Below are positions 665-60,669 of a stretch of DNA of 64,000 bases, in pieces; position 1 is the stretch's first letter, and every line of letters begins with the position of its first letter. Source of the stretch: Callorhinchus milii (taxonomy: Eukaryota); the NCBI RefSeq assembly GCF_018977255.1, contig NW_024704744.1, forward strand, positions 71,548,001 to 71,612,000, written 5' to 3'. The notes beneath the pieces are model-generated. The model ran no database searches. It was not told the origin of the DNA and saw only the letters and a list, made by a program, of their open reading frames with translations. The position numbers and the translations under genes are program-made.

Positions 665-1471
665 GTAAGTAATGCGATGACGGTGAACAAACTGATTCAA
701 AAGTGCTTTCAAAATCTTTAAGTTGTGATGAAACTAAGTTGTTAACTTGCTTATCTACTATGGTTAAAAGAAAAAAAAGGGAAAATATCATTTATGCCAG
801 CTGTCTGACTTGTGGAAACCCATTATAATGCTTGAGAATATCCAACCCAGACAGTTCCACATATGTATACAACTTGCACATTGTGTGCTTATTTAAGATC
901 TGTTATCATTCAATCAATGGCAAGTAGAAGTTAAAAGAAGTTTTTGTTGGGATATTGTAGTAGAAATTAAAATATCAAACTTGCCGATTCATTTATAAGT
1001 CATAGTAAATGGCACTTTGAAGTCGCTGGATCCTGCAAATTCTGAGATTGTGTGGTCACAGTCTATGGGACATGAAGGGTGTAGCTAGAACTTTAGGAGT
1101 GTAGAGTATGGAAGTATAGCCCAGCACTCAATGATCTGTAATGCTTCTGGTTCACTTGAATACATCAAACAGAATTTTCATTTGTTTTAGAGATTATTAA
1201 ATTTCCTTTGATCTGATTTTTGAATAGGTAGAAAACTGGACTCCAGATGGAGAAATAAACACTTTGTGGGCTAAGATTATCAGTTTGGATTGAAGTTTCT
1301 CTAAGACTGCTGTATAAAACCAATATAATATGATCGGTTTGAAATGAAATGCAGGTGATTCAGTGCTGAAATGATTGAGTTGACACCTGATTGAGCTTCT
1401 CTCAGAGAATATTTTTCCTTTTCCTGAGCGTGTAGATGATCTAATTTTTTAATGTTCTGTTCCCTTTTTAG

Positions 1472-1567
1472 CTGACCGGAGTTTATCGGGCTTGTTGGAA
1501 TGGCAGTCGAAAGATGAAGCTGTGGAGGCGCTGGCCATGCTGAATCACTACCAGATAAAAAATCCAA
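1472..1567 (+). CDS. HNRNPLL: hnRNP L-like protein, penultimate coding exon (SDRSLSGLLEWQSKDEAVEALAMLNHYQIKNP)
   Basis: Acceptor ctttttAG, donor GTAAGT at 1568; contains the diagnostic SGLLEW...LNHYQ motif of hnRNP L/LL RRM4. Confidence 0.93.
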
Positions 1568-1849
1568 GTAAGTGATAAAAATTACAGCTGGAATTCCTGA
1601 AGCAGACTGGAAAATATGGCTCAATAAATTTTTATTTCCATTAAATTGTTATCCACAGCCAGTCACATATTTCATAAAGCTACACTTGGGATGGGATTTG
1701 TATTCTTGATGAAGATCAAGATGTCTTGTTTTCAAACTGAAATGATCTGAAGTCGCCAAGAGGAATGGTTTTAACTCAGCACAACCTCCATCATTACGGT
1801 CGAGCATGTGTGATTGATGATGTTACTCTTTGCAGATTTATCATCGTGG

Positions 1850-2090
1850 TCACTTAGTAGTACTGTGGCCTCTGGATCAAAGTGATGGGCAAAAGGCTAG
1901 GCCGATAGTCTAGGCTAACATTCCAGGGCAGTGCTATGGCAGCACTGGATTGAGTCTTCACATGAAATGTTAAATTGAGGCCCCATCTGCCTTTTTTCAG
2001 TGGGATGTGAAAGATCCCACAACACTGTTTGAAAAGAGAAGCAAGTTTCTCCAGGTTAAATTGGTCAGTCATCTCATGGCTGATTTGGTG
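1850..2090 (+). mobile_element. Old Deu-domain SINE (SacSINE1/AmnSINE1-like) fragment in the last HNRNPLL intron
   Basis: tctaggctaacattcc...gttaaattgaggccccatctgcc...gtgaaagatcccacaacactgtttgaaaagag resembles the DeuSINE body; related copies occur throughout the window. Confidence 0.65.
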
Positions 2091-2193
2091 CCTGTATGCA
2101 TTGGAGTAGCACCATGTAGACTGAGCTCAGAGCAAATTAATTCTTGAAAACTGTTTAAAGGTTTATGCTTAAAGGAACCATTTTTCTTTTCAG

Positions 2194-2249
2194 GTGGTCC
2201 GTATCCCTACACCTTGAAGCTCTGTTTTTCATCCATCTCCCATGTATGA
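2194..2249 (+). CDS. HNRNPLL: hnRNP L-like protein, last coding exon (SGPYPYTLKLCFSSISHV*)
   Basis: Acceptor ttttcttttcAG; PYTLKLCFS is the conserved C-terminal motif; TGA at 2247-2249. Confidence 0.95.
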
Positions 2250-10385: not shown

Positions 10386-10580
10386 TTGTTTGATGCAAAG
10401 GGCTGCCAGGATCAGATCTCTGTGGATCAGGTGAAAAAATCAGCAGTAAAAAGATTTGATTCCACTTTTCATTTGATGTTATTAATTACATAAGATTCAA
10501 ATTAGATGCATGCTTTTGAGCAGAAAACACGGCATCGAATCGACTAGCTAAAAGTGCATTGGACCACAGTGAAGGCCTCA

Positions 10581-10914
10581 ATGTTGTTTCAAGGAAGCAC
10601 CCAAGATGAGAACATGAATCAGAAGTGTCCCACTCTGGTCATATCCCAGGTCCCAGATGATCTCTCTGACGGCAGGCATACCCCAGAGCTGCCGTCTGTC
10701 ACTCACCTCAATGTCAGGAGACCCTCCCTCATGGATTCTCTGAGCAGTCTGGTGGCAGTGGCTCAGGAAGGCTTCCGAAAAGACCAGGAGGATTGGAAAA
10801 AACATTCCGATGTACTGCATAGGAAGCCTACGAAGATGACTGGAGCCATTCCCCACATGAGCACCTCGTTGGCTGTTATTTGCCTGGTCCTGAATATCCT
10901 AGCTCCTGGCACAG
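10581..10914 (+). CDS. STUM/SPEC3-family membrane protein, coding exon 1 (start at ATG 10581 or ATG 10614)
   Basis: Open frame ending ...TGAIPHMSTSLAVICLVLNILAPGT(G), matching the STUM motif [24 protein letters not shown]; donor CAG|GTAAAC at 10915, phase 1. Confidence 0.85.
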
Positions 10915-11039
10915 GTAAACATGTATTTAAGATTCATCTACAAAGTTGTTTTAGCTGAAGGTTTAACCCTCTCTCTAGCTATTATTTAGAAAAACTTGAA
11001 TTTTTATGATATCCATGATGTTGAAATACCTCAAAATGC

Positions 11040-11395
11040 TCAATAATAAGATTGCATGCATTTCAAATAGCACTTATAACAAGTCTGAAAGTGCTTTACC
11101 GTAGTTACTGTTAAGTGTAATGACTGTATTTGTAAACAAATGTGGCAGTATGAGACATAAAACCAGGAAGGAGGTGAATGGCCGATATATTTTGGAAGGG
11201 CATTTCTCAGTAGTAAGTGAGCAGCAGTTGTGATTGTAAGTAAACAAGGCAGCTGTTTTTGTGAGCAAAGTTCCACAAACAGCCAGGAGGCATATAACGC
11301 ATTTATCTGGAGGATTGTTGGCCAGGACTCCAGGAGAAACAACTGTCATTTCAAATACTGTACAGTAATGTTAAGGGATCTTTGACATTCCACCA
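11040..11395 (-). mobile_element. Deu-domain SINE remnants
   Basis: Reverse of gtggaatgtcaaagatccc...tctcctggagtcctggccaacaatcctccagataaa...ggctgtttgtgg. Confidence 0.6.
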
Positions 11396-11413
11396 TTATT
11401 TCGAATCACTTAC

Positions 11414-11617
11414 AATAATCCCTCCAAAATAAAACAATAATAAATTGGTCATTTTAAATCCACGACTGTTTGTGGGACACTGCTGTGTGCAATTGGCTGC
11501 CGCGTTTCGCCCACAAATATACAGTCAATTCACTTTACAGTCTATTCTGTGACGCGCTTTGAGACGTCTAGAAGACGTGAAAAGCGCTATATCAAATGCA
11601 AGGATTATTATTATTAT
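11414..11617 (+). mobile_element. Young tRNA-derived SINE, 5'-truncated
   Basis: gactgtttgtgggacactgctgtgtgcaattggctgccgcg...gagacgtctagaagacgtgaaaagcgctatatcaaatgcaagg(att)n. Confidence 0.85.
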
Positions 11618-12472
11618 AAGCAAATGCAAGGATCATTATGAAAGAGCAATACAGGTTTGTACCGGGTGTCCTGGCAAACAACCCTCCAGAAAACATACAA
11701 AAAGAATAGTATTGTATGATCGAGCAATGAGAGCAGGCCCCATTCTGGCTGGTTCCTATAGCATTAAGGGCATCCACTATATAGCCGACTGAGAACATTT
11801 TGTGGTGCAACAAAAGAATTCAAATGCAAGCAAAACCACAGAACAGATCACAGCAATACTGTATCTACAGTGGCCTGTTCCTGTCCTCCCAGTGTTTCTG
11901 CTGTAGTATAGCCACACATCCGATCCCCCAGATAAAACTAGTCAATCACTTTGTGGCTGTTTGTGGGATACTGCTGTGTGCAAATTTGCTGCTGTGTTTG
12001 CCTAAAATACAACTTTACAGTAACTCCAGTGAAGTGCACTGAGATGTTTTGATGGCATGGTAAGGTGTTATATAAAATACAAGGATTGTTATTATTAATC
12101 AAGTCAATTGCAATGTTTCCTTTGAAACTAGAAAATGTGGCAAATACAAATCAGAATGCATCCAGCATCTAACTAGTTTTGATACTGGATACAGTAAACT
12201 GCCTTTCTCTTTCAACTGACCTGCTGCTGGGCATTCGCAGCAATTTCAAGAATAGACAGAACATAAATAAAGAACCTAGACAGTACAATACTGATTATTA
12301 AACTCATTTGGGGATTCAAATGAAAGTTATCAATCCTCATAGCTTTGCTGCCTTGGTTTATGAGATTAATTGAGCCACTCGGTGAGATTATATTTCCTCT
12401 ATATCCATTGTTCAGTGTCCAGCAATGCGTCTGTAAAGTGTTCTGAGACTTTATTTTACCTGAAGTGCACTA

Positions 12473-12791
12473 ATAATAATAATAATAATCCTTGCATTTG
12501 ATATAGCGCTTTTCACGTCGGGAGGACGTCCCAAAGCGCTTTACAGAATATACTGTAAAGTGAGTTGACTGTATATTTGTGGGCGAACGCGGCAGCCAAT
12601 TGCGCACAGCAATGTCCCACAAACAGTCATAGATTGAAAATGACCAATTTAATTATTGTTTTTGGTTTTGGAGGGATTATTATTAGGCGTGTGGAGTAAG
12701 GAAACTTGCCCAAGGTTTCGCCCTGCCTGGAATTGAACTCAGGTCTCTCGCTTGCAAAGCGAGTGCTCTAACCACTGAGCTACAGGACTCC
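12473..12791 (-). mobile_element. Full-length young tRNA(Ala-like)-headed SINE with 6-bp TSD gcacta
   Basis: Reverse strand starts ggagtcctgtagctcagtggttagagcactcgctttgcaagcgagagacctgagttcaattcc (pol III A/B boxes) and ends in (ATT)n; gcacta at 12467-12472 and 12792-12797. Confidence 0.9.
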
Positions 12792-13834
12792 GCACTACAT
12801 AAATACAAGTTGCATACAAGTTAAGTACTGTCTTTATGTGCATATTTTTAATGGATCAATGTCTTTATATAATCCTTAAATAATTTTCTATATTATAATA
12901 ATCCTTGCATTTGATATAACGCCTTATCCCATCTTTGCGACATCTCAAAGCGGTTCACAGAATATACTGTGAAGTGAATTGACTGTATATGGATTGGAAA
13001 CATCATTTATACAATCCCCAAGTTGTAAGTACCTGAATCCTAGCAGCCTTGGTATAAGTTTGTCCCAATATCTCATTTAAATGTTCCTTAATCCTGTCTT
13101 TGTGCATCTTTTTATTAAGACCTGTATATGATTCAGTGGTGCCCTCTTCTGTTGTGTATAGCAATGAAAGTACTGCAATTTCAGGTAAAGTCCAGTGCTG
13201 CTGCTCATACTCACCATGGCGATGGCTATTGTTGACTGTCTGTTCATACCCACAAATTGTTTTGTTTTGCCTGAGTTAACAGCAGGTAGGAACATTGCGG
13301 GAGTGGTTTCACCACATAATTTTACCCAACATCTTATCTGAGTCATGTGGAGGCTGCATCTGCCTTGTGATTCTGCTAGACATTAAGGGACACTCCCTCC
13401 CCCACTGCTATTTCAAAAAAACATGGAATCTTTCTCTCTGTTATCCTGGGTTAGATTCCCCTCCGCATCCAAATTCACCCTCAAATGAATTGGCTCCTCG
13501 TCTCATTGTTGGTTTGCAGGTTGTTGCTTGTGCAAATTAGCTGCCGGATTTGCCTGAGTAACAATACTCACTTTGTTTCTAATTAATCTCATTCTGTAAA
13601 ACGATGTTTCTTTCATGGTGCTGTAGAAGTGTAAGCTGTTGCCTAAGGCCAAAACTGCTGCCTTGTGTGTATAATCCTGAACCAAATAGAAAAATGCTAG
13701 CAATTGGCATGTGATAGAGTCCACCAGAAAACATAAATCTCAATTTAAAAAAAGTGTATTTTCTCTCAGAGTCCTTCAGATGAAGTTTTCTTTAGGCAAT
13801 TATCTGATGACAGTACTAATTGTTATTCAGCTGT

Positions 13835-14245
13835 CAGGGGGCATGCTATTGGTATCACCAATTTGTTGTAAATACCCTAAACCAGAAGGTTGTGATTTCA
13901 AGCCTCATGTTATGATGTTGAACTCACAGTCTAGGCTGACACTTCAGTGTAGCACTGGGGAGAATTTCATTGCCATACCTGCTGCTCTTCAGATGAGATG
14001 TTGAACCAAAGTTCAAGTGATAAGGATCCCATGGCACTATTTGAAAGGAGAAGGGAGTTTTTTCCGATATCTCGGCCAACGATCTCCCAGATCAAATTGG
14101 TTGCTCACTTCAAGGATATTTCTGAGACAACACTGTGCACAAACTGGCTGCCACATTCACCTACAAAATACACAGTCGCTACATTTTACAATAAATCCTA
14201 TGACACACTTTGAGTCCTCACAACATGAAAGGCAAGGATTATTAT
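13835..14245 (+). mobile_element. Near-complete old Deu-domain SINE
   Basis: agaaggttgtgatttcaag...gtctaggctgacacttcagtg...ggatcccatggcactatttgaaagg...aaactggctgccacattcacctacaaa. Confidence 0.7.
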
Positions 14246-14649
14246 TTTTATTTATTTAGAGCATTTAACATAAAACGTTGGTAAATTGCATCACCGTAAC
14301 ATGTTGTAAAGTAAATTATGGGCATGATAATTTCACAGTGATTTTCACCATAGGCCAAAAATGAATGGATAATGAAAATTGATTTTCAAAATATATTGTA
14401 GATTAAAGAAGTATAACATAATTCACTGAGAAACAGTGATTAAATAATCTCCATTATAATGATGGTGTTCAATTTCGCATACTTGTGTTTCTCTTGAATG
14501 TAATAAAGGATTAATAAAATATGTTTTGGGACCAACAGTTAAGTCTAGTGATTTGTCAAATGAAATACAAAGCGATTAAAATCAAGTGAGTAAAATATTA
14601 TCCTGTAATCCTTTCTCGTTTAAAAAAATCCATTACATTTTGGCAATAT

Positions 14650-15045
14650 AATCCTTGCATTTGATAAAACGTCTTTAATATCAAAAGGGTTTTACAGGAG
14701 ATTGTAAAATGTGGTCACTGTATATTGATAGGCTATTCTATAACTCAATTCTGTAACCATTGAGTACAGCAATGCCCCACAACCATTAAGTGAACAAATA
14801 ATTTTACCTGGAGGATTGTTGGCCAGGACATTGTCTTTTCTCTTTCTCTTTTCAAATAATGTCATAGGATCTTTGACATCTAACTGAAGATAGATAGAAC
14901 CTCTGTTTAACACCTCATCCAAAAGACAGAGAACTTCCAACAATACAACTTTCTCCCAGCATTGCACTGAAGTGACTATGGAGTCAAAATGGATGAACCC
15001 ACAACCTTCTGACTCATAGGCAAGAGAGATAGCAATTGAACCTGG
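14650..15045 (-). mobile_element. Near-complete old Deu-domain SINE
   Basis: Reverse complement of the same consensus (gaacccacaaccttctgactc at about 15000). Confidence 0.7.
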
Positions 15046-15194
15046 TTGATGTGCTGTTTAAAACATAAAACACGTTTTTGGATGTCCTTCAACAAACGGC
15101 ATTTATATAGCACTCTTCATGCAGATAGCATCTCGGAGCACTACACGATGGCCAGGTTACACACCAAGAAGGGAGAAGGGGAAGGGGGAAGTGA

Positions 15195-15645
15195 GGGGTG
15201 GAGGGACTGGACTATGAGGAGCGATTAAGTAAACTGGGCATGTTCACACTGGACAAGAGAAGGTTGAGAGGTGATATGATTGCAGTTTTTGAGATTCTAA
15301 AGGATCTGAATAATGCAGACCATGATAAGCTGCTTTATCTTGTGCAGAACGGGAGAACCAGAGGACATGGCTTGCGATTGAAGGGGGTCAATTCAAAACA
15401 AATCCGTGGAAACACTATTTCAGTGAGGAAGTAGTAAATGTATGGAACAGGCTCCCTACAGGGACAATGGAAGCAGAAAGTGTTGATACTTTCAAAAGCA
15501 AATTAGATAGATTTCATTTATGAAATAGTATCTTGGGATACAGTATATAGTTTGGGACATGACATATGCAAGCGACTGCCAGAATGGTGGAAGACCAACT
15601 GGATAGACCTGGTCTTCTCTCATCTAGCAATTCTTATGTTCTTAT
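15195..15645 (+). mobile_element. CR1 LINE 3' fragment
   Basis: YEERLSKLGMFTLDKRRLRGDMIAVFEIL...RTRGHGLRL is the typical CR1 ORF2 C-terminus. Confidence 0.88.
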
Positions 15646-16038
15646 GACCATAGAGATCAAAGATATGAGTCTTGAGGTGGCATTTAAAGATAGATAAAGT
15701 AGTGGTAGTGGCATAGCCAGTGAGTGGATGAGCCACGTAGACTCAGACGTAAATTTACTAACTGAGCCATTGGGGGAGCTTCAAGTTTATTTTGTTGTCC
15801 TTTCTATATTTGTTCAGTTCTCGGTGGGGGATGGGTGGCTGAGTGGTGGTGAAAAGCTGAGTAGCAGTCTGTCACTCTGCCCTGCACCTGTTGCTCTTGC
15901 TGAGTATTTCTGTAACTGACAGCTCAGTGCTACCACTGGGAACACTCCATATCAGGCACCTGAGATCTCAATGAACGTCAACAGATTTCAGTGAAAGAAA
16001 TACACAATAGAAAAGAGCACTGGAAATGAAGAGAATAG

Positions 16039-16260
16039 CCCTGCGTACATTATTATCCCTGTGTACATTACTGCCTCTGTGTATAATGCTGTCCCTGGGT
16101 ACAGTATTCCTCCTGTGTACATTACTGCCTCTGTGCAGTAATATCCCTGTGTAACTATTATCCCTATGCACATTATATACTACTGCTGCCATGTATGGCA
16201 GTGCCTCTGAGTAGCTCTGTACAATCCTGCTCCCATATGCGGCAGCGCCCTTGTGTGCCT
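16039..16260. repeat. Degenerate minisatellite, about 18-bp unit (tgtgtacattactgcctc-like)
   Basis: tgtgtacattactgcctctgtg occurs twice exactly, with many diverged units around it. Confidence 0.65.
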
Positions 16261-16557
16261 GATCCCTCCGCACACCCTCTCTGTCTCTCTGACTATTTTA
16301 TGTAGACATAAAGGGAGTTTCTCCTGGTGTCCTGCCAAACAATCCTCCAGCTAAACTTGGTCATTCACTACATGGCCGTTTGTGGAACATTGCTGCACCC
16401 AAATTGGCTGCCGCCTTCACCTACAAATACAGCCATTACACTTTACAATGTGAAGCCCTTCGAGACGTTCAACAATAATGATAAGGCACTTTATCAACTG
16501 GAAGGATTATTATTGTTTAATAAATATTGATTAACAGAGCTGTGCGGAATCTTTCAG

Positions 16558-16755
16558 GTACTGTTCTGTCTGGGTTCTCACTTCTGTGCTGCTCAGAGCC
16601 TCGGACCCTCCCCAGCCACAAGAGCAGTGACGAAACCCTGGCTTTGGTTTGCCTAAATGTTTGGGTGGGCATCGCTCAGCTCTTCACTGTGCCCTTTCTA
16701 CTGGTGGGTTGGCTCTGGAGCATAACCTGGGGAGTGATGATGGTCAACCTATCGT
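16558..16755 (+). CDS. STUM/SPEC3-family membrane protein, coding exon 2
   Basis: Acceptor tctttcAG, donor GTAAGT at 16756, phase 1/1, 198 nt. GTVLSGFSLLCC...VCLNVWVGIAQLFTVPFLLVGWLWSITWGVMMV matches the family motif Q..T....VGW.WSI.WG. Confidence 0.9.
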
Positions 16756-17059
16756 GTAAGTACTTTCCCCACAAAGACAATTCAGATCAAGGTTTAATTT
16801 GCATAAGTTTTAACGGGATTCCTAAATAATCCCTTTAGAGTTCCGGTCCACCTGTGCATTCTTTGCTCTGGAAGTAGAACATGTCAGAGCTGAGTGACTT
16901 CCAATTTCTGGAAAGAGTCTCCAGTTACATGGCTCGGAATCTATCTCAATTAACTTGGTCTCTTTCACGTAAGTTGAATGTCTCGAAGAGTTTCACAAAC
17001 ACTATAGGGATTACTGAGCAGATAGTGAAAGGTGTGAGTGGTTGATCAATCGCATAACT

Positions 17060-17132
17060 GGGCTTTGTGAACCGATGCAGACCCGATGGGCTGAATGGCT
17101 CCCTTCTGCACTGTAGATTTCTACGTTTCTAT
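17060..17132 (+). mobile_element. CR1-type 3' tail
   Basis: gcagacccgatgggctgaatggctcccttctgcactgtagatttctacgtttctat. Confidence 0.7.
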
Positions 17133-17467
17133 AATTCTTTATCAAGGAATTACAGGTATGAAATAGTGCACCTTAAGCCAATTGACAAGAGATCCTTCTT
17201 TGGGGGGAAAGTTCTGAAACTCCGACTTAATTTGTAAGCCTTAATTTCTTAAAAAGAACTGCAGTAAACCATCCTGCAAAATAAGAATAAGTTTAAGAAT
17301 TTGTCTAAATTCTGCACATACTTTTAATGTTCGACAATGGTCTTAAGGCTAAGACCCTGAGCCACTTTGTGTCGCTGTGTAAAAAAAACTCACCAAGCCA
17401 GTTTGCTTTTGATAAAGCTGCTCTAAAATCATTTGCAAATCCTGTTTTTTCTTTCTCCTTGCTGCAG

Positions 17468-17565
17468 GTGAACGGAAGAGCCCTGCCAAACCTCAAACCA
17501 CCATCGCTGGAATGAAAAGCCCAGTCGTGTTCCTGCCTTCCTGGATGAGTGACCCTGTAAAATAA
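17468..17565 (+). CDS. STUM/SPEC3-family membrane protein, probable last coding exon (CERKSPAKPQTTIAGMKSPVVFLPSWMSDPVK*)
   Basis: Strong acceptor ttttttctttctccttgctgcAG about 710 nt after exon 2; the phase-1 frame stays open to TAA at 17563-17565. No homology support for this tail. Confidence 0.6.
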
Positions 17566-31357: not shown

Positions 31358-33250
31358 ACTTCAGTATAATGTATGTCGTTCCACCCTCGCCTCCACTAAT
31401 TCGTCGTTCTACTCCAAGACAATCTTGGAGCCAAGGACAACCCCAGGTTCCACTTCTCCATCACTAACCAGCTCCTCCTTCCACCCACTCGTGCCTCGCG
31501 CATCCTCACCTCCAATGCCAACTGTGAGGCAATGCTGGACTTCCTTGAATCCAAAGTCGAAGGGATCCACTCAGCTGCCTTCCATCTACCACCATCTACC
31601 CCTCCCATACTGGCCCCTACCCATCCCTCCTTCCGCACCTTTGAACCTGTCTCCAACGCCTCTTTCACCACCACTATAACCCGCATGAAGCAGACCACCT
31701 GCTCCCTCGACCCCATCTCTACCCCTCTTCTTACCTCCCAGCTCCACCTCCTTGACCCTCTCTCACAGACATCATTCCCACCCCTTTAAAAATGGCTGTT
31801 ATCACTCATATCCTTAAAAAACCCTCCCTGGACCCATTCCTGCTCTTAAACTATCATGCCATTTCTAACCTCCCTTTGTTCTCCAAGGTCTTGGAATGAG
31901 TTGTTGCTTCCCAGCTTCGCTCCTTCCTCTACCGCCACTCCCTTCACAAGCCCCTCCGAACGGGTTTCCGTGCCGCCCACAGCACAGAAACAGCTCTGGT
32001 CAAAGTGATAAATGACATTCTGTCCATCTGCTACCAGGGCTCCCTCTGCCTCCCCGTCCTCTTTGACCTCTCTGCTGCCATCAGCACCATTGCCCACTTT
32101 ATCCTCATCCACCAACTCTCCTCTCACCTCAACTTTTACAGTTCTGTCCTTGAATGGTTCAGATTGTACCTCTCACACCACCTCCACTTCATCTCCACAA
32201 ACAGTTTCTCCTTTAGCCCCCACGCTATCCCAGGGCTTTGTTCTTGGTCCCCTCCTCTTCAATATCTATATGCTCCCTCTTGGTGACATCATCCGGAGAC
32301 GTGGGGTCAACTTCCACATGTATGCGGATGACACCCAACTCTACCTCTCTGCCTCCACCCTTGACTCCAGGACCACTGCTATCCTGACAGAATGGCTGTC
32401 AGACATTAAGTCCTGGATGAGAGTTAATTTTCTTCAGTTAAACGTCACCAAGACCGAGGCTCTCCTGATTAGCTCCCGTCAGCGCCTCTGGCGTTGACAG
32501 CATCATCATCCATGTTACACATTCCATCTTACTAAGCCAGTCGGGAATCTTGGCATCTTGTTTGACCCTCAACTATCATTTCTACCCCACATCCATGCCA
32601 TGACCCCCTCTGCCTTCCCCCACCTCAGCAACATTGCTTGGCTCCACCACTGTCTCACACCACAGGCCGCCAAAACCCTCAAACACACCTTCATTACATC
32701 GAGGCTCGACTATGCAAACTTCTTGCTTATCGGCCTCCCCAACTCCTCCCTCCTGTGTCCTCTCCCGCACTAGGCTCCGTGACCCTATCACCCCCATCTC
32801 GCCTGACTCCACTGGCTCCCCATCACTCAGAGGATACAGTTCAAGATCCTGGTCCTCACTTTCAAAGCCCTCCATGGTTTTGCTCCCCACTACCTCCACG
32901 ACTTCCTAACCCCCTATCATCCTGCCCGCTCCCTCCGCTCAGTGTGCTCTAGCTTGCTTCACGTCCCCCACCTTGCCCGCCCCACTATTGGCGGGCAGCC
33001 CTTTGCCATTCACACCCTCTGGAACTCCATCACACAGTCCCTCCGCCTCGCCCCCTCCCTTGCCTCCTTAAAGACCCATCTTAAGACCTTCCTCTTTGAC
33101 TGTGCATTTGATCAACCTCCTTGCCCCCCTGCCCTCTACCCTCCCCGATCCCGACCCCCAGCTCGGGTCCGAGACCCTAATCATCTAGGCTTTGGGACGT
33201 CCTCCCGATGTGAAAGGTTCTGTACAAATGTAAATTTGCTGTTGTTGTTC
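31358..33250 (+). mobile_element. L2 LINE, about 1.9 kb 5'-truncated copy with disrupted reverse transcriptase
   Basis: RT motifs across shifting frames: [75 protein letters not shown]; stops and frameshifts; L2 tail. Confidence 0.93.
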
Positions 33251-45037: not shown

Positions 45038-45162
45038 GCGCTGTCGGAGGAAGGCGAATTGGGGAGATCATGAGGATGGGACAAAAAAAAGGAGCCACAT
45101 GAATAACATTACTGTCCCTTTGTTTTTTTAAAAAAAAACATTCAACATCTGTTCTGCAGAGT

Positions 45163-45490
45163 AATGATCATAAGGATGGAGGAGGAGGAGAAGGAGAAGG
45201 AGGAGTGGGGTTGGGGCAGATGAATGATCATGAGGATGGAGGAGGAGGAGGAGAAGGAGGAGTGGGGTTGGGGCAGATGAATGATCATGAGGATGGAGGA
45301 GGAGGAGGAGGAGAAGGAGGAGTGGGGTTGGGGCAGATGAATGATCATGAGGATGGAGGAGGAGGAGAAGGAGGAGTGGGGTTGGGGCAGATGAATGATC
45401 ATGAGGATGGAGGAGGAGGAGAAGGAGGAGTGGGGTTGGGGCAGATGAATGATCCTGAGGATGGAGGGAGAGGTGGGTGGGGTTGGGCGG
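45163..45490. repeat. G-rich minisatellite, 5 units plus 1 degenerate unit of about 54-60 bp
   Basis: Unit ATGAATGATCATGAGGAT(GGA)4-6GAAGGAGGAGTGGGGTTGGGGCAG read directly. Confidence 0.92.
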
Positions 45491-45598
45491 TGAGAGCGGT
45501 ACAGAGGAGGGCGCTAGGACCCGGCGGGGCGACTCCGATAAAGCCGCGGCTGCCTGTCAGGCCGTGACGTCAGCGAGCCTCCCGACGCGCAGTCTAAG

Positions 45599-45665
45599 AT
45601 GGCGGCGGAGAGCGAGGCGCGAGCGGCACGGCCCCGGTCCCAACCGCGCACCCAACCCAGCTCAG
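45599..45665 (+). CDS. ATL2: Atlastin-2 coding exon 1 (MAAESEARAARPRSQPRTQPSS-G)
   Basis: Strong Kozak aagATGG in the CpG island; donor CAG|GTAACA in phase 1, in frame with the exon at 60168. Confidence 0.72.
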
Positions 45666-45794
45666 GTAACAGCACTCACCCCGGGGGGGGCACCACCGGC
45701 CCGGCTCGGCACGGCACGGCACATGGGCCGGACCCGGGGAGAAGAGCAGGCGGGCCGCCCTCCAGCTCGCTGCCCTCCTCCCCTTCCCACCTGT

Positions 45795-45817
45795 CTCTCT
45801 CTCTCTCTCTCTCTCTC
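45795..45817. repeat. (CT)n microsatellite
   Basis: Read directly. Confidence 0.9.
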
Positions 45818-45955
45818 CTGAAGGCGGGTAAAAGTTTTGCGAGTCGGGCTCCGTCTGCGCGGCCGCCGGCAGTTTGAATGGCGCCGCGCAGTTTGGGGGA
45901 GCGCTCCGGGAAAGGGAGGCGGTGGGGGGCAGCAACTCAGCTGAGGAGAGGGTGG

Positions 45956-45991
45956 GAAGAAGAAGAAGAAGAAGAAGAAGAGGAGGAGGAG
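45956..45991. repeat. (GAA)8(GAG)4 microsatellite
   Basis: Read directly. Confidence 0.9.
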
Positions 45992-48627
45992 GACGGTACG
46001 TCTTGAGGAGCAAACGGGGAGGCCGTGTGTCTGTCTGTTGAGGGGTTGGGGGCGGGCGGCGAATGCCGTTGAATCCGAGGAGCAGCGGCTGACAGTCGGC
46101 GTGTCCGCCGCCGAGTGGAGGGGGCAGAGAGCCAAAGCGGCCTGTGAACCAGGCTCAGGCTCTGGTGCTGGAGAGGGTGGGTGGGTACGGAGAGTGAGCA
46201 GCTGCACGTCCAAGGCCCCTCAATCCGCGGCGCTGAGTGAGTGAGGGAGTGAGGGAGGGAGGGAGGCAGACGCTGGCCCCTCGGGCCCGGGGTAACCGTT
46301 TTCCGTTACGGCTCCGAGGATTTGAATCATAACGGGGGCGGAGTGGCGGGTACGGAAAGCCGCGGGTGACAGACCAGACCAGCCCGAACGCCCTTTCCCC
46401 CCTCTCCCCCCCCCCTTCCCCTCACGCCCTCCGAAACGGGCGCCCGCAGCTGATCCAGCGGCGGAGGCTGGGCATGTGGTGACATTAATAACCAGCCTTG
46501 CATTCGCTACAGCGCCTTATCACGTCGCCGAGACGCCTCGAAACGCTTCAAACTCCGGGTCATTTATGTAACGTACGTGTGCGTAGTGTGTATATTTGTG
46601 GTGTGTAGCATACACATACACATACATATCCTGTGTGTTGAGTAAAACGTCCATAATCGTGTATGTATAGCATTTGTATATGCAGTGTTCGTGGCTTCGT
46701 CTTTTTCTCGTCTTTTCTTTTTTTTTAAAAAAAAACACACCACCTACTTTCACACTTTGAAACCACACACTGGTTCTGGTTCACGGGTGGTTTTCTGAGT
46801 ATAAATTAAAATGTCTGACCTCAGGGTGATTATGTTTGTTGTGTGGCCGTGCGTAACCGCCGTGCGCTCCAGCCGCTTCACCAACCCCCCCCCCGCCCCC
46901 CCCCACTGTGAACTCTTTATTTTCATTGAGTCTTCATTGAAGAAAGTGGAAACGGCAAATGCTTTCTTGTATTTAAAAAAAAATCCAGCCGTTGGGCGCG
47001 AAGCTTTGGCACTTAGGAGCAAGTCCATTTATTTAATGGGATTCATTAGAACAGCCTCGTAAGAGGATCTTCATTAAATCGCTTCGGGAGATCATTGCAA
47101 ACTGGCAGAACTGGAAAGGCGAACTTATTAAAAAAAACTGCCGTTTTGTCGAGGAGAATCCGCTTCTCGGCTCAAGTCCGGGTCATTTACTGTTAATTCT
47201 TCACTTGGCTGAAGCTTTGCTGCTTTTTGATGTGCTTATGTAACCGCGAGAGCGTGACTGAGGCTGCAGACGCAGAGTCCGTCCAGGCTGTGTGATGTTT
47301 GAGGAGGGGGAAGATGGAGCAGAACGAGTTTGAGAAAACGGGAACACTAACAAGTAATATAATGGGTGTTTTTTTTGGTTGGGGGATGGGGGGGGGGGGG
47401 TGAGGGAGAGGGGGCAAAAGAATGTGATCGGAGTGGTCCTGTGAATTTCCCGGAGTAGCTATTTAGGAGCTGCTTCTGGGAATGTCTAGGTCATTTCATG
47501 CAAGTTTATATCTATTGCAGACTTGGGTTTAACAATGTTACATTGCTAATTAGTGTTTGAATTAAGTCAGTATAAATGATCAAGTCACTTGAATAGAATG
47601 ATTTTTGTATTTTTAGTAGAGCAAGATATAAAATTCCTGCTGTGGTATCTTTGGTTTCGCAGCTTTTGGGTGCTTTGGCTGCAGATCACTGAAGTTTCGT
47701 GCAAGTGATCTGAAACGCCTGTTTTCTCATTTAATATCTTAGTGAGGAGGAACTAAGAATAAACCCCTTGTTAATGGGTTCAGAATTCTTGTCTACATGT
47801 GAGTAGTGCATTTGTGTAGTTGAATAATTTTGTAAATAATTTTGTGCAAAATTCTAAGTTACAGCCAAGGCTGTAGAAATTCAATTAATAAAATTCAATA
47901 TTTTTACATTTAATGTAGGTTGCCCTTGATGTTTTGTGTTCTAAACTTTAAAGTGCGTGCATGGCCTCTTTCATTTAGTGGGCTCATTTGGTCCAACAGT
48001 ATTCAAAGTACAGGGATGCACATAGTTATAATGTGTCACTGCCAGTTTAAAAGTAATGTTAAGGCTGTGTGATAATTACTTTTTAACCTGGTATCTGTTC
48101 TGAAGTAAATCATTATATTAGTTATCTTATCTAGTTCCTATTTATTAAAGAAAAACCTAATACCGAGGTGCATTTCAGATCAGTTCACAGTGTAAGAAAA
48201 TCTTGCTTTTTTGCTGTCAAAAAAATATTTTTTTTGGCAGCTGTGTATCTTGACTGTTATCAGACATGTGGGCTTGTTCTGAGCAGTATGCGATGTGACA
48301 GAAGTCATGATGATGCCCTCTGAAAACCTATCACTGTGCTTAAGTGTCCAACCCAAACACTGAGATTTCTGTATGTCTGTGGAAATTTCCGTTTTGGTGT
48401 GGCGTGTGAATTATTTCCCAAATGAACATACTCATTTACCTAATCATAGACAGTTCAGGTGCAAGAACAGCTTTTATGATGCTTCTCCAGGGGGCTGTTG
48501 TTTTGAGCTGTGCTCTTACCTGAGTTGTTAGTGATTTATCATAATTTTCAGTGATTTGGAGTAATAAGTTGTAACTGCAGAGTGCTGTGCTGTATGCCCT
48601 TTGCACTTTACACTGTGCACTGTGACC

Positions 48628-60167: not shown

Positions 60168-60415
60168 GTGACTTTGGTATCCAGGATGTTCAAATGAATT
60201 CAGACGACGTACCTATGAAAGAAGCTAGGCCAGTGCAAGTAGTGTTGGCTCATGAAGATGACCATCATTTTGATCTGGATGAAGAGGCCCTTGAGCGGAT
60301 TCTATTGCAAGAACACATTCGGGACTTGAATGTTGTGGTTGTTTCTGTGGCTGGAGCATTTCGTAAAGGCAAATCATTTCTCTTGGACTTCATGCTGAGA
60401 TACATGTACAATCAG
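60168..60415 (+). CDS. ATL2: Atlastin-2 coding exon 2 (start of the GTPase domain with the P-loop); gene continues beyond the window
   Basis: [82 protein letters not shown]; [23 protein letters not shown] is ATL2-typical; acceptor aaacAG, donor CAG|GTAAGC. Confidence 0.96.
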
Positions 60416-60669
60416 GTAAGCAACAATGTTAATGCTTTATATAATGCTTCTCATAATTGAACAAAATATCACTTATACTAATCTTAACGTTAAGGTGGTT
60501 TAAATTACAAATTTGGGTGATAAAGATATGGTTATAAATTCCATAGCTGCATCTAGAACATTTGTTAACAGAGAAAATAACCATTAGCTGATACCAATTT
60601 TTCAATCTCTTGATTAATCCTGATCCTGAATTGTACTTGGAAGGCATTTTCAAAATCACATATTATGGG

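What the first reader, a model, noticed from the sequence alone, without database searches (positions are those of the whole stretch)
10581..17565. Hidden three-exon STUM/SPEC3-family gene between HNRNPLL and ATL2
Two separate ORF-track fragments splice together with canonical GT-AG, phase-1 junctions (10581/10614-10914, 16558-16755, 17468-17565) into an uninterrupted 209/198-aa protein. It carries the family signatures AIPxM...AVICLxLN...PGxGT..S and QLFT..FLLVGWxWSIxWGxxMV. Established: Drosophila stum is needed for joint-angle proprioception, and mammals have one short STUM (C1orf95) at another locus. From memory, the QLFTVPFLLVGWLWSITWG segment is closer to invertebrate stum/SPEC3 proteins than to vertebrate STUM (IQILTAIVMVGWIMSIFWG), and I know of no such gene between mammalian HNRNPLL and ATL2. 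Inference: an ancient second family member kept in cartilaginous fishes and lost in mammals, a candidate mechanosensory or ciliary component.
Basis: partly seen in the sequence, partly recalled or inferred. Interest (0 to 1): 0.85.

Follow-up and report, generated by a model that had tools for sequence, protein, structure and literature searches.

The report
Annotated shark Stum/SPEC3-family membrane gene
The three-exon gene is real and intact, but it is already in the public elephant-shark annotation as "protein stum homolog", and whether it is a second copy lost in mammals could not be tested here.

Summary
Exons 10581/10614-10914, 16558-16755 and 17468-17565 have GT-AG borders and phase-1 junctions. 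Pfam Spec3 (PF15795) runs across junction 1: exon 1 covers profile positions 2-24 and exon 2 covers 26-85, E 7.5e-20.

The gene is not hidden. A public NCBI protein, "protein stum homolog [Callorhinchus milii]" (P0001, 159 aa), is exactly this splice product read from the third ATG, 10731. Shark orthologues start at the position of the ATG at 10614, so the 198-aa form is the likely one.

Orthologues are annotated in four elasmobranchs, sturgeons, an eel and the frog Ascaphus. The 10 jawed-vertebrate rows form one group in the tree, UFBoot 94 / SH-aLRT 62. So the gene is not confined to cartilaginous fishes.

Contigs from two of four probable RNA runs cover exon 1. One leaves the genome at the predicted donor.

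No search returned a canonical mammalian or teleost STUM. "Second paralogue lost in mammals" against "relocated STUM orthologue" stays open; I lean about 0.6 to the paralogue. The scan's earlier notes hold no stum or SPEC3 finding. Interest is low to moderate.

The parts
10614..10914 (+). Coding exon 1, read from the favoured start ATG 10614. An upstream in-frame ATG lies at 10581 and the public model starts at ATG 10731. The exon encodes a poorly conserved N-terminal tail and the first hydrophobic block (AIPHM...LNILAPGT). It ends in phase 1.
   Evidence: Searches give the sequence and translation. Pfam Spec3 covers profile 2-24 at residues 89-111. BLASTP to bamboo-shark P0003 aligns window residue 11 to P0003 residue 2 and runs to the exon end: 42% identity, E 3e-28. 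There is an A at -3 for ATG 10614 and a T at -3 for ATG 10581. Contigs of runs X1 and X2 cover 10605-10911.
10915..16557 (+). Intron 1, 5643 nt, GT...AG. It is full of interspersed repeats, including a tRNA-like SINE at 12718-12789 on the - strand.
   Evidence: Searches show the borders. Rfam tRNA scores 53.5 bits. Repeat-driven depths reach about 8.5e5 in the bins from 11405 to 13004.
16558..16755 (+). Coding exon 2, the core of the Spec3 domain. It holds the second half of block 1 and the second hydrophobic block (QLFTVPFLLVGWLWSITWGVMMV). It is phase 1 at both ends.
   Evidence: Searches give the sequence and translation. Pfam Spec3 scores E 7.5e-20 over profile 26-85. phmmer against 1.84 billion representatives gave 299 hits at E<=0.001, with 82% identity to two shark proteins.
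16756..17467 (+). Intron 2, 712 nt, GT...AG.
   Evidence: One search shows the borders. The junction is the same as in public protein P0001.
17468..17565 (+). Coding exon 3, the C-terminal tail (ERKSPAKPQ...VVFLPSWMSDPVK), with stop TAA at 17563-17565.
   Evidence: Searches give the sequence and translation. It aligns end to end with the last 31 residues of bamboo-shark P0003: 42% identity, E 4e-8.
1453..2246 (+). Context: the last two coding exons of the upstream hnRNP-L-family gene (...LLEWQSKDEAVEALAMLNHYQIKNP... and ...GPYPYTLKLCFSSISHV, then a stop).
Evidence: Stop-to-stop frames, recognised by eye from recalled hnRNP L / LL C-termini. Pfam found no hit in these short pieces.
60194..60460 (+). 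Context: an early coding exon of the downstream atlastin-family gene, with the P-loop GAFRKGKS.
   Evidence: ORF. Pfam GBP, E 2.1e-13, profile 1-43. Assigning it to ATL2 rather than ATL1 or ATL3 is recalled, not tested.

Best explanation
This is an intact, transcribed, already annotated gene of the elephant shark Callorhinchus milii. It encodes a small membrane protein of the Stum/SPEC3 family (Pfam PF15795). It has three coding exons on the + strand and lies between an hnRNP-L-family gene and an atlastin gene. The protein is most likely 198 aa, starting at ATG 10614. It has a weakly conserved cytosolic-type N-terminal tail, then two long hydrophobic blocks, at residues 43-73 and 89-124 of the 159-aa public form. 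The blocks are built around an invariant N..I..P..G kink and an invariant Q-L-x-T-V...G-W-x-W-S-x-x-W-G face. A short C-terminal tail follows. The gene is under purifying selection across jawed vertebrates: chimaera, sharks, skate, sturgeons, eel and a basal frog. Its function is inferred, not shown. By analogy with fly stum (needed for mechanical sensing in proprioceptive neurons; recalled) and sea-urchin SPEC3 (ciliated ectoderm; Pfam's own description), it probably sits in the membrane of ciliated or mechanosensory cells. There it would act as a small structural or adaptor subunit, not as a channel or an enzyme. Its relation to mammalian STUM was not testable. I lean about 0.6 to a separate paralogue and about 0.3 to the relocated orthologue.
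For: Splice sites, phases and ORF. Pfam Spec3 continuous across junction 1. Public NCBI protein P0001 is identical to the splice product from ATG 10731. Exon-wise conservation with bamboo-shark P0003 runs from the start position to the stop. Orthologues are 56-64% identical in four elasmobranchs, 45-50% in sturgeons, 43% in eel and 39% in Ascaphus over the full length, with 26 invariant columns. The 10 jawed-vertebrate rows form one side of a branch, UFBoot 94 / SH-aLRT 62. Transcription: in X1 a 360-nt contig covers 10605-10736 and runs 228 nt past the start of the laid stretch. A 436-nt contig covers 10707-10911 and then has 231 letters that do not lie on the intron. In X2 a 200-nt contig covers 10707-10906. 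Exon contigs have depth 16-32, against 3-5 for unique intron contigs in X1. Two hydrophobic blocks. Helices at 45-57, 61-72 and 85-130 in a low-confidence model.
Against: The runs are only guessed to be RNA, and they are contigs, not reads. The 10914/16558 joint row was not among the 15 of 351 joints shown. Junction 2 was outside the laid stretch. Two of the four runs (X3, X4) have no depth on exon 1. The AlphaFold model is poor (mean pLDDT 55.7, pTM 0.26), so the topology is tentative. No functional datum exists for this gene or its orthologues in the papers searched. The functional analogy rests on distant relatives: 44% identity to an insect stum and 39% to a sea-urchin SPEC3-like cluster in exon 2.
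Confidence: 0.85

Rival explanations
1. The gene is a separate, ancient vertebrate paralogue of STUM, linked to the hnRNP-L-like and atlastin genes. It is kept in chondrichthyans, sturgeons, eel and a basal frog, and it was lost in amniotes, including mammals.
For: All 156 domain segments were read. Names were looked up for 30 of the 150 listed HMMER representatives, and named further jawed-vertebrate hits. None of the named ones is a mammal, bird, reptile or derived teleost. Only the chondrichthyan, sturgeon, eel and Ascaphus sequences carry the jawed-vertebrate signature. Invertebrate members at 56-61% identity outrank anything that could be a canonical STUM. NCBI's names waver between 'stum homolog', 'stum-like' and 'SPEC3-like' for evident orthologues, as expected if none of the reference proteins is clearly closest. 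Echinoderms and tunicates already have more than one family type, so old paralogy exists in the family. The window's neighbours are not those recalled for human STUM.
Against: No canonical STUM sequence was in hand, so there is no tree, no reciprocal search and no proof that any genome has both genes. No second Spec3 protein of C. milii or of any other chondrichthyan appeared. Representatives are 50% clusters, so amniote members could hide inside the frog's cluster. 120 of the 150 listed hits were not looked up by name.
Confidence: 0.58
2. The gene is the plain one-to-one orthologue of mammalian STUM. It sits in its ancestral place next to the hnRNP-L-like and atlastin genes. In the lineage to mammals the gene was moved by rearrangement and its sequence evolved fast.
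For: NCBI names the C. milii, Heptranchias, Scyliorhinus, one sturgeon and the Ascaphus proteins 'protein stum homolog'. No other Spec3 protein of these species was found. From recall only: human 1q42 (STUM) and 2p22 (HNRNPLL, ATL2) belong to the same member of a fourfold paralogous set and lie together on chicken chromosome 3. A move within one ancestral chromosome is therefore plausible.
Against: An orthologue would have to be less like the shark gene than choanoflagellate and cnidarian members are, because the last listed hit is at E 3.5e-6. Meanwhile the shark, sturgeon, eel and frog copies stay at 50-82% in exon 2. Eel, bamboo shark, white shark and one sturgeon copy are named 'SPEC3-like', not stum.
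Confidence: 0.3
3. It is a chance ORF pair, a pseudogene or a retro-copy, with no function.
For: None beyond the absence of depth on exon 1 in two of four runs.
Against: Pfam E 7.5e-20. The frame is intact over three exons with canonical sites. Introns are present, so it is not a retro-copy. The start and stop positions are conserved with a shark that diverged early. 26 columns are invariant across 11 vertebrate proteins. Contigs of higher depth lie on exon 1 than on the intron.
Confidence: 0.02

Closest known systems
NCBI protein 'protein stum homolog [Callorhinchus milii]' (P0001, 159 aa)
   Same: It is 100% identical to the window's three-exon product from ATG 10731 to the stop, with the same two junctions.
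   Different: The public model starts 39 codons after ATG 10614. Shark and skate orthologues (P0002-P0005) begin at the position of 10614, with MN(K/Q)xCPxL. An X1 contig covers that ATG. The public N-terminus is therefore probably too short.
Chondrichthyan, sturgeon, eel and Ascaphus proteins named 'SPEC3-like', 'stum homolog' or 'stum-like' (P0002-P0010, P0027, P0030)
   Same: Same domain and same tails. Exon 2 is 82% identical in sharks, 65-68% in sturgeon, 50% in eel and 54% in frog. They form one group in the tree, UFBoot 94 / SH-aLRT 62.
   Different: The N-terminal tails differ in length and sequence.
Drosophila stum and insect relatives (represented here by the stick-insect proteins P0151/P0158, 'protein stum')
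   Same: Same Spec3 domain and same invariant G-W-x-W-S-x-x-W-G.
   Different: Exon 2 identity is 44%. The insects form a separate, well-supported clade with the GWGWSIWWG motif. From recall, the fly protein is far longer and has the domain at its C-terminus. The proprioception phenotype is known only for the fly gene (recalled).
Sea-urchin SPEC3 (represented here by the cluster of P0121, which holds 'protein SPEC3-like [Lytechinus variegatus]')
   Same: Same Pfam family, a similar size of about 190 aa, and the same two-block layout.
   Different: Exon 2 identity is 39%. The N-terminal tail is rich in proline and glutamine. It does not group with the jawed-vertebrate clade with any support.
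Human and mouse STUM (C1orf95)
   Same: Same family, by Pfam's and NCBI's naming.
   Different: Nothing could be compared, because no sequence of it was returned by any search. Its length (141 aa), its locus (1q42) and its motif are recalled only.

Membership tests
Stum/SPEC3 family (Pfam PF15795 Spec3) | Match to the Pfam Spec3 profile above the curated cut-off of 27 bits | tested here: met
   Exon 2 alone scores 71.7 bits, E 7.5e-20, over profile 26-85 of 85. Exon 1 adds profile 2-24 at 22.8 bits, which is below the cut-off on its own. The precomputed Pfam entry for P0001 is PF15795.
Stum/SPEC3 family (Pfam PF15795 Spec3) | Two hydrophobic blocks carrying the conserved N..I..P-G-x-G-T and Q..T...G-W-x-W-S-x-x-W-G motifs | tested here: met
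   The invariant columns include N55, I56, P59, G62, Q102, L103, T105, V106, G112, W113, W115, S116, W119 and G120 in 11 vertebrate proteins. G112, W113, W115, S116 and W119 stay invariant when six invertebrate or unnamed members are added. Hydropathy peaks lie at 43-73 and 89-124.
Jawed-vertebrate orthogroup annotated as 'SPEC3-like' or 'stum homolog' (sharks, skate, sturgeon, eel, Ascaphus) | Groups with these proteins to the exclusion of invertebrate members | tested here: met
   The 10 rows form one side of a branch, UFBoot 94 / SH-aLRT 62, and do so in 94% of 200 bootstrap trees. The tree has 87 rows and 88 columns. Support is moderate and not starred.
Jawed-vertebrate orthogroup annotated as 'SPEC3-like' or 'stum homolog' (sharks, skate, sturgeon, eel, Ascaphus) | Same genomic neighbours (hnRNP-L-like upstream, atlastin downstream) in the other species | not testable with these tools
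The other locus tools hold no vertebrate genomes.
Canonical vertebrate STUM (human C1orf95) orthogroup | Reciprocal best match or tree grouping with mammalian, avian and teleost STUM | not testable with these tools
   No canonical STUM sequence came back (150 of 299 hits listed) or 30. Sequence from memory may not be used.
Canonical vertebrate STUM (human C1orf95) orthogroup | Shared neighbours with human STUM | tested here: inconclusive
   The window shows an hnRNP-L-type gene upstream and an atlastin gene downstream. The window has no other recognisable gene beyond repeats and a reverse-transcriptase ORF. The human neighbours of STUM are recalled only, so the mismatch is a lead, not a test.
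Lamprey Spec3 protein (P0068, Lampetra) as pro-orthologue | Groups with the jawed-vertebrate clade | tested here: not met
   It joins them in 0 of 200 bootstrap trees. Its end branch is 0.98, and its model carries a 16-residue insert at the exon 1/2 boundary. The placement is unsafe either way.

The most novel reading that the evidence does not exclude
Jawed vertebrates began with two Stum/SPEC3 genes. This one is the slowly evolving, invertebrate-like copy, linked to HNRNPLL-ATL2. It survives in chimaeras, sharks, skates, sturgeons, eels and a basal frog, and it was lost in amniotes. Mammals would then keep only the fast-evolving STUM. The ancestral mechanosensory or ciliary role of the family in vertebrates could be studied better in this copy, in a skate or a sturgeon, than in mouse Stum.
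Probability: 0.5. Interest if true: 0.4.

Novelty: already known. Interest (0 to 1): 0.25.

Why it matters
The gene itself is in the public annotation, so its existence is not news. Three things remain. First, a small correction: the public protein probably lacks 39 N-terminal residues. Second, an open evolutionary question: is this a second Stum/SPEC3 gene that amniotes lost? If so, it joins the many ancient genes that cartilaginous and early ray-finned fishes keep and mammals lack. It would also be a cleaner handle on the vertebrate role of a family whose only functional data come from fly proprioception and sea-urchin ciliated ectoderm. Third, no paper in the library searched mentions these 'SPEC3-like' vertebrate genes (0 papers), so their expression and function are unstudied.

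Tried and rejected
I did not try it again.

2. Reaching canonical STUM.
- The single-protein word search with P0001 gave 9 hits among 34 candidates, all of the shark and sturgeon type.
- The profile search with the 17-sequence alignment A2 scored only the 8000 candidates sharing most words and gave 24 hits. It found no canonical STUM. It did not even return P0027, P0030 or P0068, which were in the query alignment. That search was swamped, and its blank means nothing.
- The HMMER job listed 150 of 299 hits. The rest cannot be seen.

3. The protein atlas showed only three named rows, from arthropod, nematode and arthropod clusters. It gave no ids, so it was no help for orthology.

4. Names. 30 of the 150 representatives were looked up. 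9 of the 30 carried no name at all (P0012, P0087, P0092, P0120, P0124, P0150, P0106, P0125, P0112).

5. Structure. The AlphaFold model of P0001 built from alignment A1 was poor (pLDDT 55.7). I therefore ran no fold search, since matches would be meaningless. The profile search of PDB sequences gave 0 hits at E<=10.

6. Reads. The one read-laying run was flooded by repeat-derived contigs. Only 15 of 351 joints and 24 of 1360 loose ends were shown, so the 10914/16558 joint could not be read directly. I infer it from where the 436-nt contig leaves the genome. It leaves at 10911, which is where a leftmost-placed joint would fall, because CAG precedes both the donor and exon 2. Junction 2 and the 3' end lay outside the 6000 letters allowed.

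7. Papers.
- One search listed 4 papers, none on evolution of the family.
- One search was badly designed: 'stumb' matched 'stumble', giving 16,580 papers.
- ('SPEC3-like') found 0 papers.
- One search listed 2 papers, and I saw only the listings.
- I opened no paper and asked for no supplements. The supplements of the elephant-shark genome paper (recalled) might list this gene among genes absent from mammals.

8. The search of earlier findings by words ('stum SPEC3'; 'ITPKB PSEN2 PARP1') met no finding.

9. A regex count of exon-2-only fragments was too crude to use beyond one figure: 53 of 156 proteins match only from profile position 16-30 onwards.

10. Readings rejected. Chance ORF, pseudogene and retro-copy are all rejected (see the rival explanations). 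The lamprey P0068 as a clear orthologue is also rejected.

Full report
**What is in the sequence.**
- On the + strand an ORF opens after an in-frame TAG at 10545-10547. It holds ATGs at 10581, 10614 and 10731.
- It runs to G 10914, followed by GTAAAC.
- The next coding piece starts after TTTCAG at 16558 and ends at T 16755, followed by GTAAGT.
- The last piece starts after TGCAG at 17468 and ends with TAA at 17563-17565.
- The lengths, 334 nt and 198 nt, make both junctions phase 1.
- The three pieces translate without stops. They give 209 aa from 10581, 198 aa from 10614 and 159 aa from 10731.
- I kept the pieces apart in all searches and never joined them.

**Is it more than chance?**
- Pfam Spec3 (PF15795) matches exon 2 at E 7.5e-20 (71.7 bits, cut-off 27) over profile positions 26-85 of 85.
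- It matches the last 23 residues of exon 1 at E 1.3e-4 over positions 2-24.
- The only profile position between the two matches is the codon split by intron 1.
- Exon 3 has no Pfam match. It aligns end to end with the last 31 residues of a bamboo-shark protein, down to the terminal lysine before the stop.

**It is not hidden.**
- A search with the exon-1 ORF returned 2 proteins among 11 candidates.
- The first is 'protein stum homolog [Callorhinchus milii]' (P0001, 159 aa, 100% identical). This also names the organism.
- Its sequence is letter for letter the three-exon product from ATG 10731, with the junctions ...APGT-G-TVLSG... and ...MVNLS-C-ERKSP....
- The gene is therefore already in NCBI's annotation.

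**The start codon.**
- Four elasmobranch orthologues begin MN(K/Q)xCPxL or MSINKRCPTF.
- BLASTP of exon 1 against P0003 starts at window residue 11, next to the methionine of ATG 10614, and at P0003 residue 2.
- ATG 10614 has an A at -3, while ATG 10581 has a T at -3.
- The 11 codons from 10581 have no counterpart in the orthologues.
- I favour the 198-aa form. The public 159-aa form looks N-terminally short.

**Transcription.**
- The run search gave 13 runs of the same organism, all kept as contigs. None is on record as RNA; six holders are guessed to be RNA.
- I laid four of them on 10605-16604.
- In X1 a 360-nt contig (depth 16.4) ends at 10736 and extends 228 letters beyond the start of the stretch. 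If it is RNA, it includes ATG 10614.
- Also in X1, a 436-nt contig (depth 32) lies on 10707-10911 with its first 205 letters. Its other 231 letters do not lie on the intron.
- CAG precedes both the donor (10912-10914) and exon 2 (16555-16557). A joint written at its leftmost place would therefore be 10911 to 16555, which is exactly where the contig leaves.
- The joint row itself was not among the 15 of 351 shown, so this step is an inference.
- In X2 a 200-nt contig covers 10707-10906.
- Unique intron contigs in X1 have depth 3-5.
- X3 and X4 have no depth on exon 1.
- This fits a spliced RNA made in some samples only.
- Junction 2 was outside the 6000 letters allowed.

**Relatives.**
- With P0001 as query, 9 proteins among 34 candidates passed. 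They come from Chiloscyllium, Heptranchias, Scyliorhinus, Leucoraja, Carcharodon and two Acipenser species. Their names are 'SPEC3-like', 'stum homolog', 'stum-like' or hypothetical.
- phmmer with exon 2 against 1.84 billion representatives gave 299 hits at E<=0.001 and 60 at E<=1e-10. The best 150 are listed.
- Name look-ups for 30 of these showed further vertebrates: eel (P0027, 'SPEC3-like'), the frog Ascaphus truei (P0030, 'stum homolog') and Lampetra (P0068, unnamed).
- The other named hits are invertebrates or a choanoflagellate: limpet, snail, crinoid, brittle star, sea urchins, tunicates, stick insects, a water bug, a hookworm, a sea anemone, an oyster and a choanoflagellate.
- Nine of the 30 had no name.
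- Exon 2 identity is 82% to sharks, 65-68% to sturgeon, 54% to frog and 50% to eel.
- It is 58% to the limpet, 56% to the crinoid, 44% to an insect stum and 39% to the sea-urchin SPEC3-like cluster.

**Tree.**
- I used 87 full-length domains and 88 columns. Two near-identical cluster mates, P0156 and P0157, were dropped, as were all rows that did not span the domain.
- The 10 jawed-vertebrate rows form one side of a branch, with UFBoot 94 / SH-aLRT 62.
- The lamprey row joins them in 0 of 200 bootstrap trees. It sits on a long branch, and its model has a 16-residue insert at the exon 1/2 boundary.
- Deep branches are unresolved.
- The gene is therefore a conserved jawed-vertebrate gene, not one confined to cartilaginous fishes.

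**What could not be tested.**
- No mammalian, avian or teleost STUM came back. One search was swamped: 8000 candidates were scored and 24 hit.
- So there is no tree against STUM, no check for a second Spec3 gene in this genome and no synteny elsewhere.
- Hints for paralogy: no amniote appears among the named hits, and none appears among the sequences with the jawed-vertebrate signature. NCBI's names waver. Invertebrate members outrank any possible STUM.
- Hints for orthology: NCBI's name for this very protein, and no second chondrichthyan Spec3 protein in any call. From recall only, 1q42 and 2p22 once lay on one chromosome.
- I put paralogy at about 0.6.

**The protein.**
- Alignment of 11 vertebrate proteins gives 26 invariant columns. 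They cluster in AIP, C-L-x-L-N-I-x-x-P-x-x-G and L-x-C-x-N-x-x-V-G-x-x-Q-L-x-T-V-x-F-L-x-x-G-W-x-W-S-x-x-W-G.
- Hydropathy shows two blocks, at residues 43-73 and 89-124 of P0001.
- The AlphaFold model is poor (pLDDT 55.7). It shows helices at 45-57, 61-72 and 85-130.
- No solved structure matches by sequence.
- The likely role is a small membrane subunit in ciliated or mechanosensory cells. This is inferred from fly stum (recalled) and from Pfam's description of Spec3. Nothing here shows it.

**Surroundings.**
- Upstream on the + strand lie the last two exons of an hnRNP-L-type gene, at 1453-1572 and 2148-2246 (by eye).
- Downstream on the + strand lies an atlastin exon at 60194-60460 (Pfam GBP, E 2.1e-13).
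- A GC-rich island at 45250-46500 precedes it.
- Between them are repeats and a reverse-transcriptase ORF.

**Verdict.**
- The gene is real, conserved and already annotated.
- The evolutionary claim is plausible but untested.
- The literature searched is silent on it.
- The scan's earlier notes hold nothing on stum or SPEC3.

Noticed in passing
window 10707-10736: Contigs over exon 1 break at the same place in two runs. X1 record 1 ends at 10736. X1 record 2 and X2 record 9 both start at 10707. Depth doubles from 16.4 to 32. There is no AG before 10707 and no GT after 10736. It could be a heterozygous site at 10706 or a second path joining here. The public protein starts at ATG 10731, 24 nt further on.
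   Followed up: no
window 12718-12789 (-), and bins 11405-13004: A tRNA-like element lies in intron 1 (Rfam tRNA, 53.5 bits). It sits inside a repeat whose copies recur through the window. This explains contig depths of up to about 8.5e5 in the probable RNA runs.
   Followed up: partly
window 45156-46500: A minisatellite with a 54/117-nt unit, 5.5 copies and 92% matches lies at 45156-45467. It abuts a GC-rich island of 65-68% GC at 45250-46500. This is about 14 kb upstream of the atlastin exon, so it may be that gene's promoter and first exon.
   Followed up: partly
P0002 (Heptranchias perlo isoform X2), against window 10914/16558 and 16755: This isoform lacks two residues (GT) at junction 1. 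It also carries an extra KYFPC at junction 2. The window also reads C-K-Y-F-P if translation runs on past the donor at 16755. This suggests tandem alternative splice sites in the family.
   Followed up: no
P0068/P0156 (Lampetra): The lamprey model has a 16-residue insert exactly where intron 1 lies in the window gene. It is probably a read-through of a short intron. The row sits on a long branch and does not join the jawed vertebrates.
   Followed up: partly
hits, read: 53 of 156 family proteins match only from profile position 16-30 onwards. Many of them start with a few unrelated residues just before G-T-x-x-S-G and end near L-S/A-G. They look like exon-2-only ORFs from genomic or short contigs. 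This suggests that both intron positions are old and widely shared in animals.
   Followed up: partly
window 32012-32494 (+): An ORF with a reverse-transcriptase domain (Pfam RVT_1, E 3.4e-13). It is part of a retroelement between the Spec3 gene and the atlastin gene.
   Followed up: no
window 1453-1572 and 2148-2246 (+): The terminal coding exons of the hnRNP-L-type gene end with ...GPYPYTLKLCFSSISHV. By recall this tail mixes features of hnRNP L and hnRNP LL. Calling the gene HNRNPLL needs a proper comparison.
   Followed up: no
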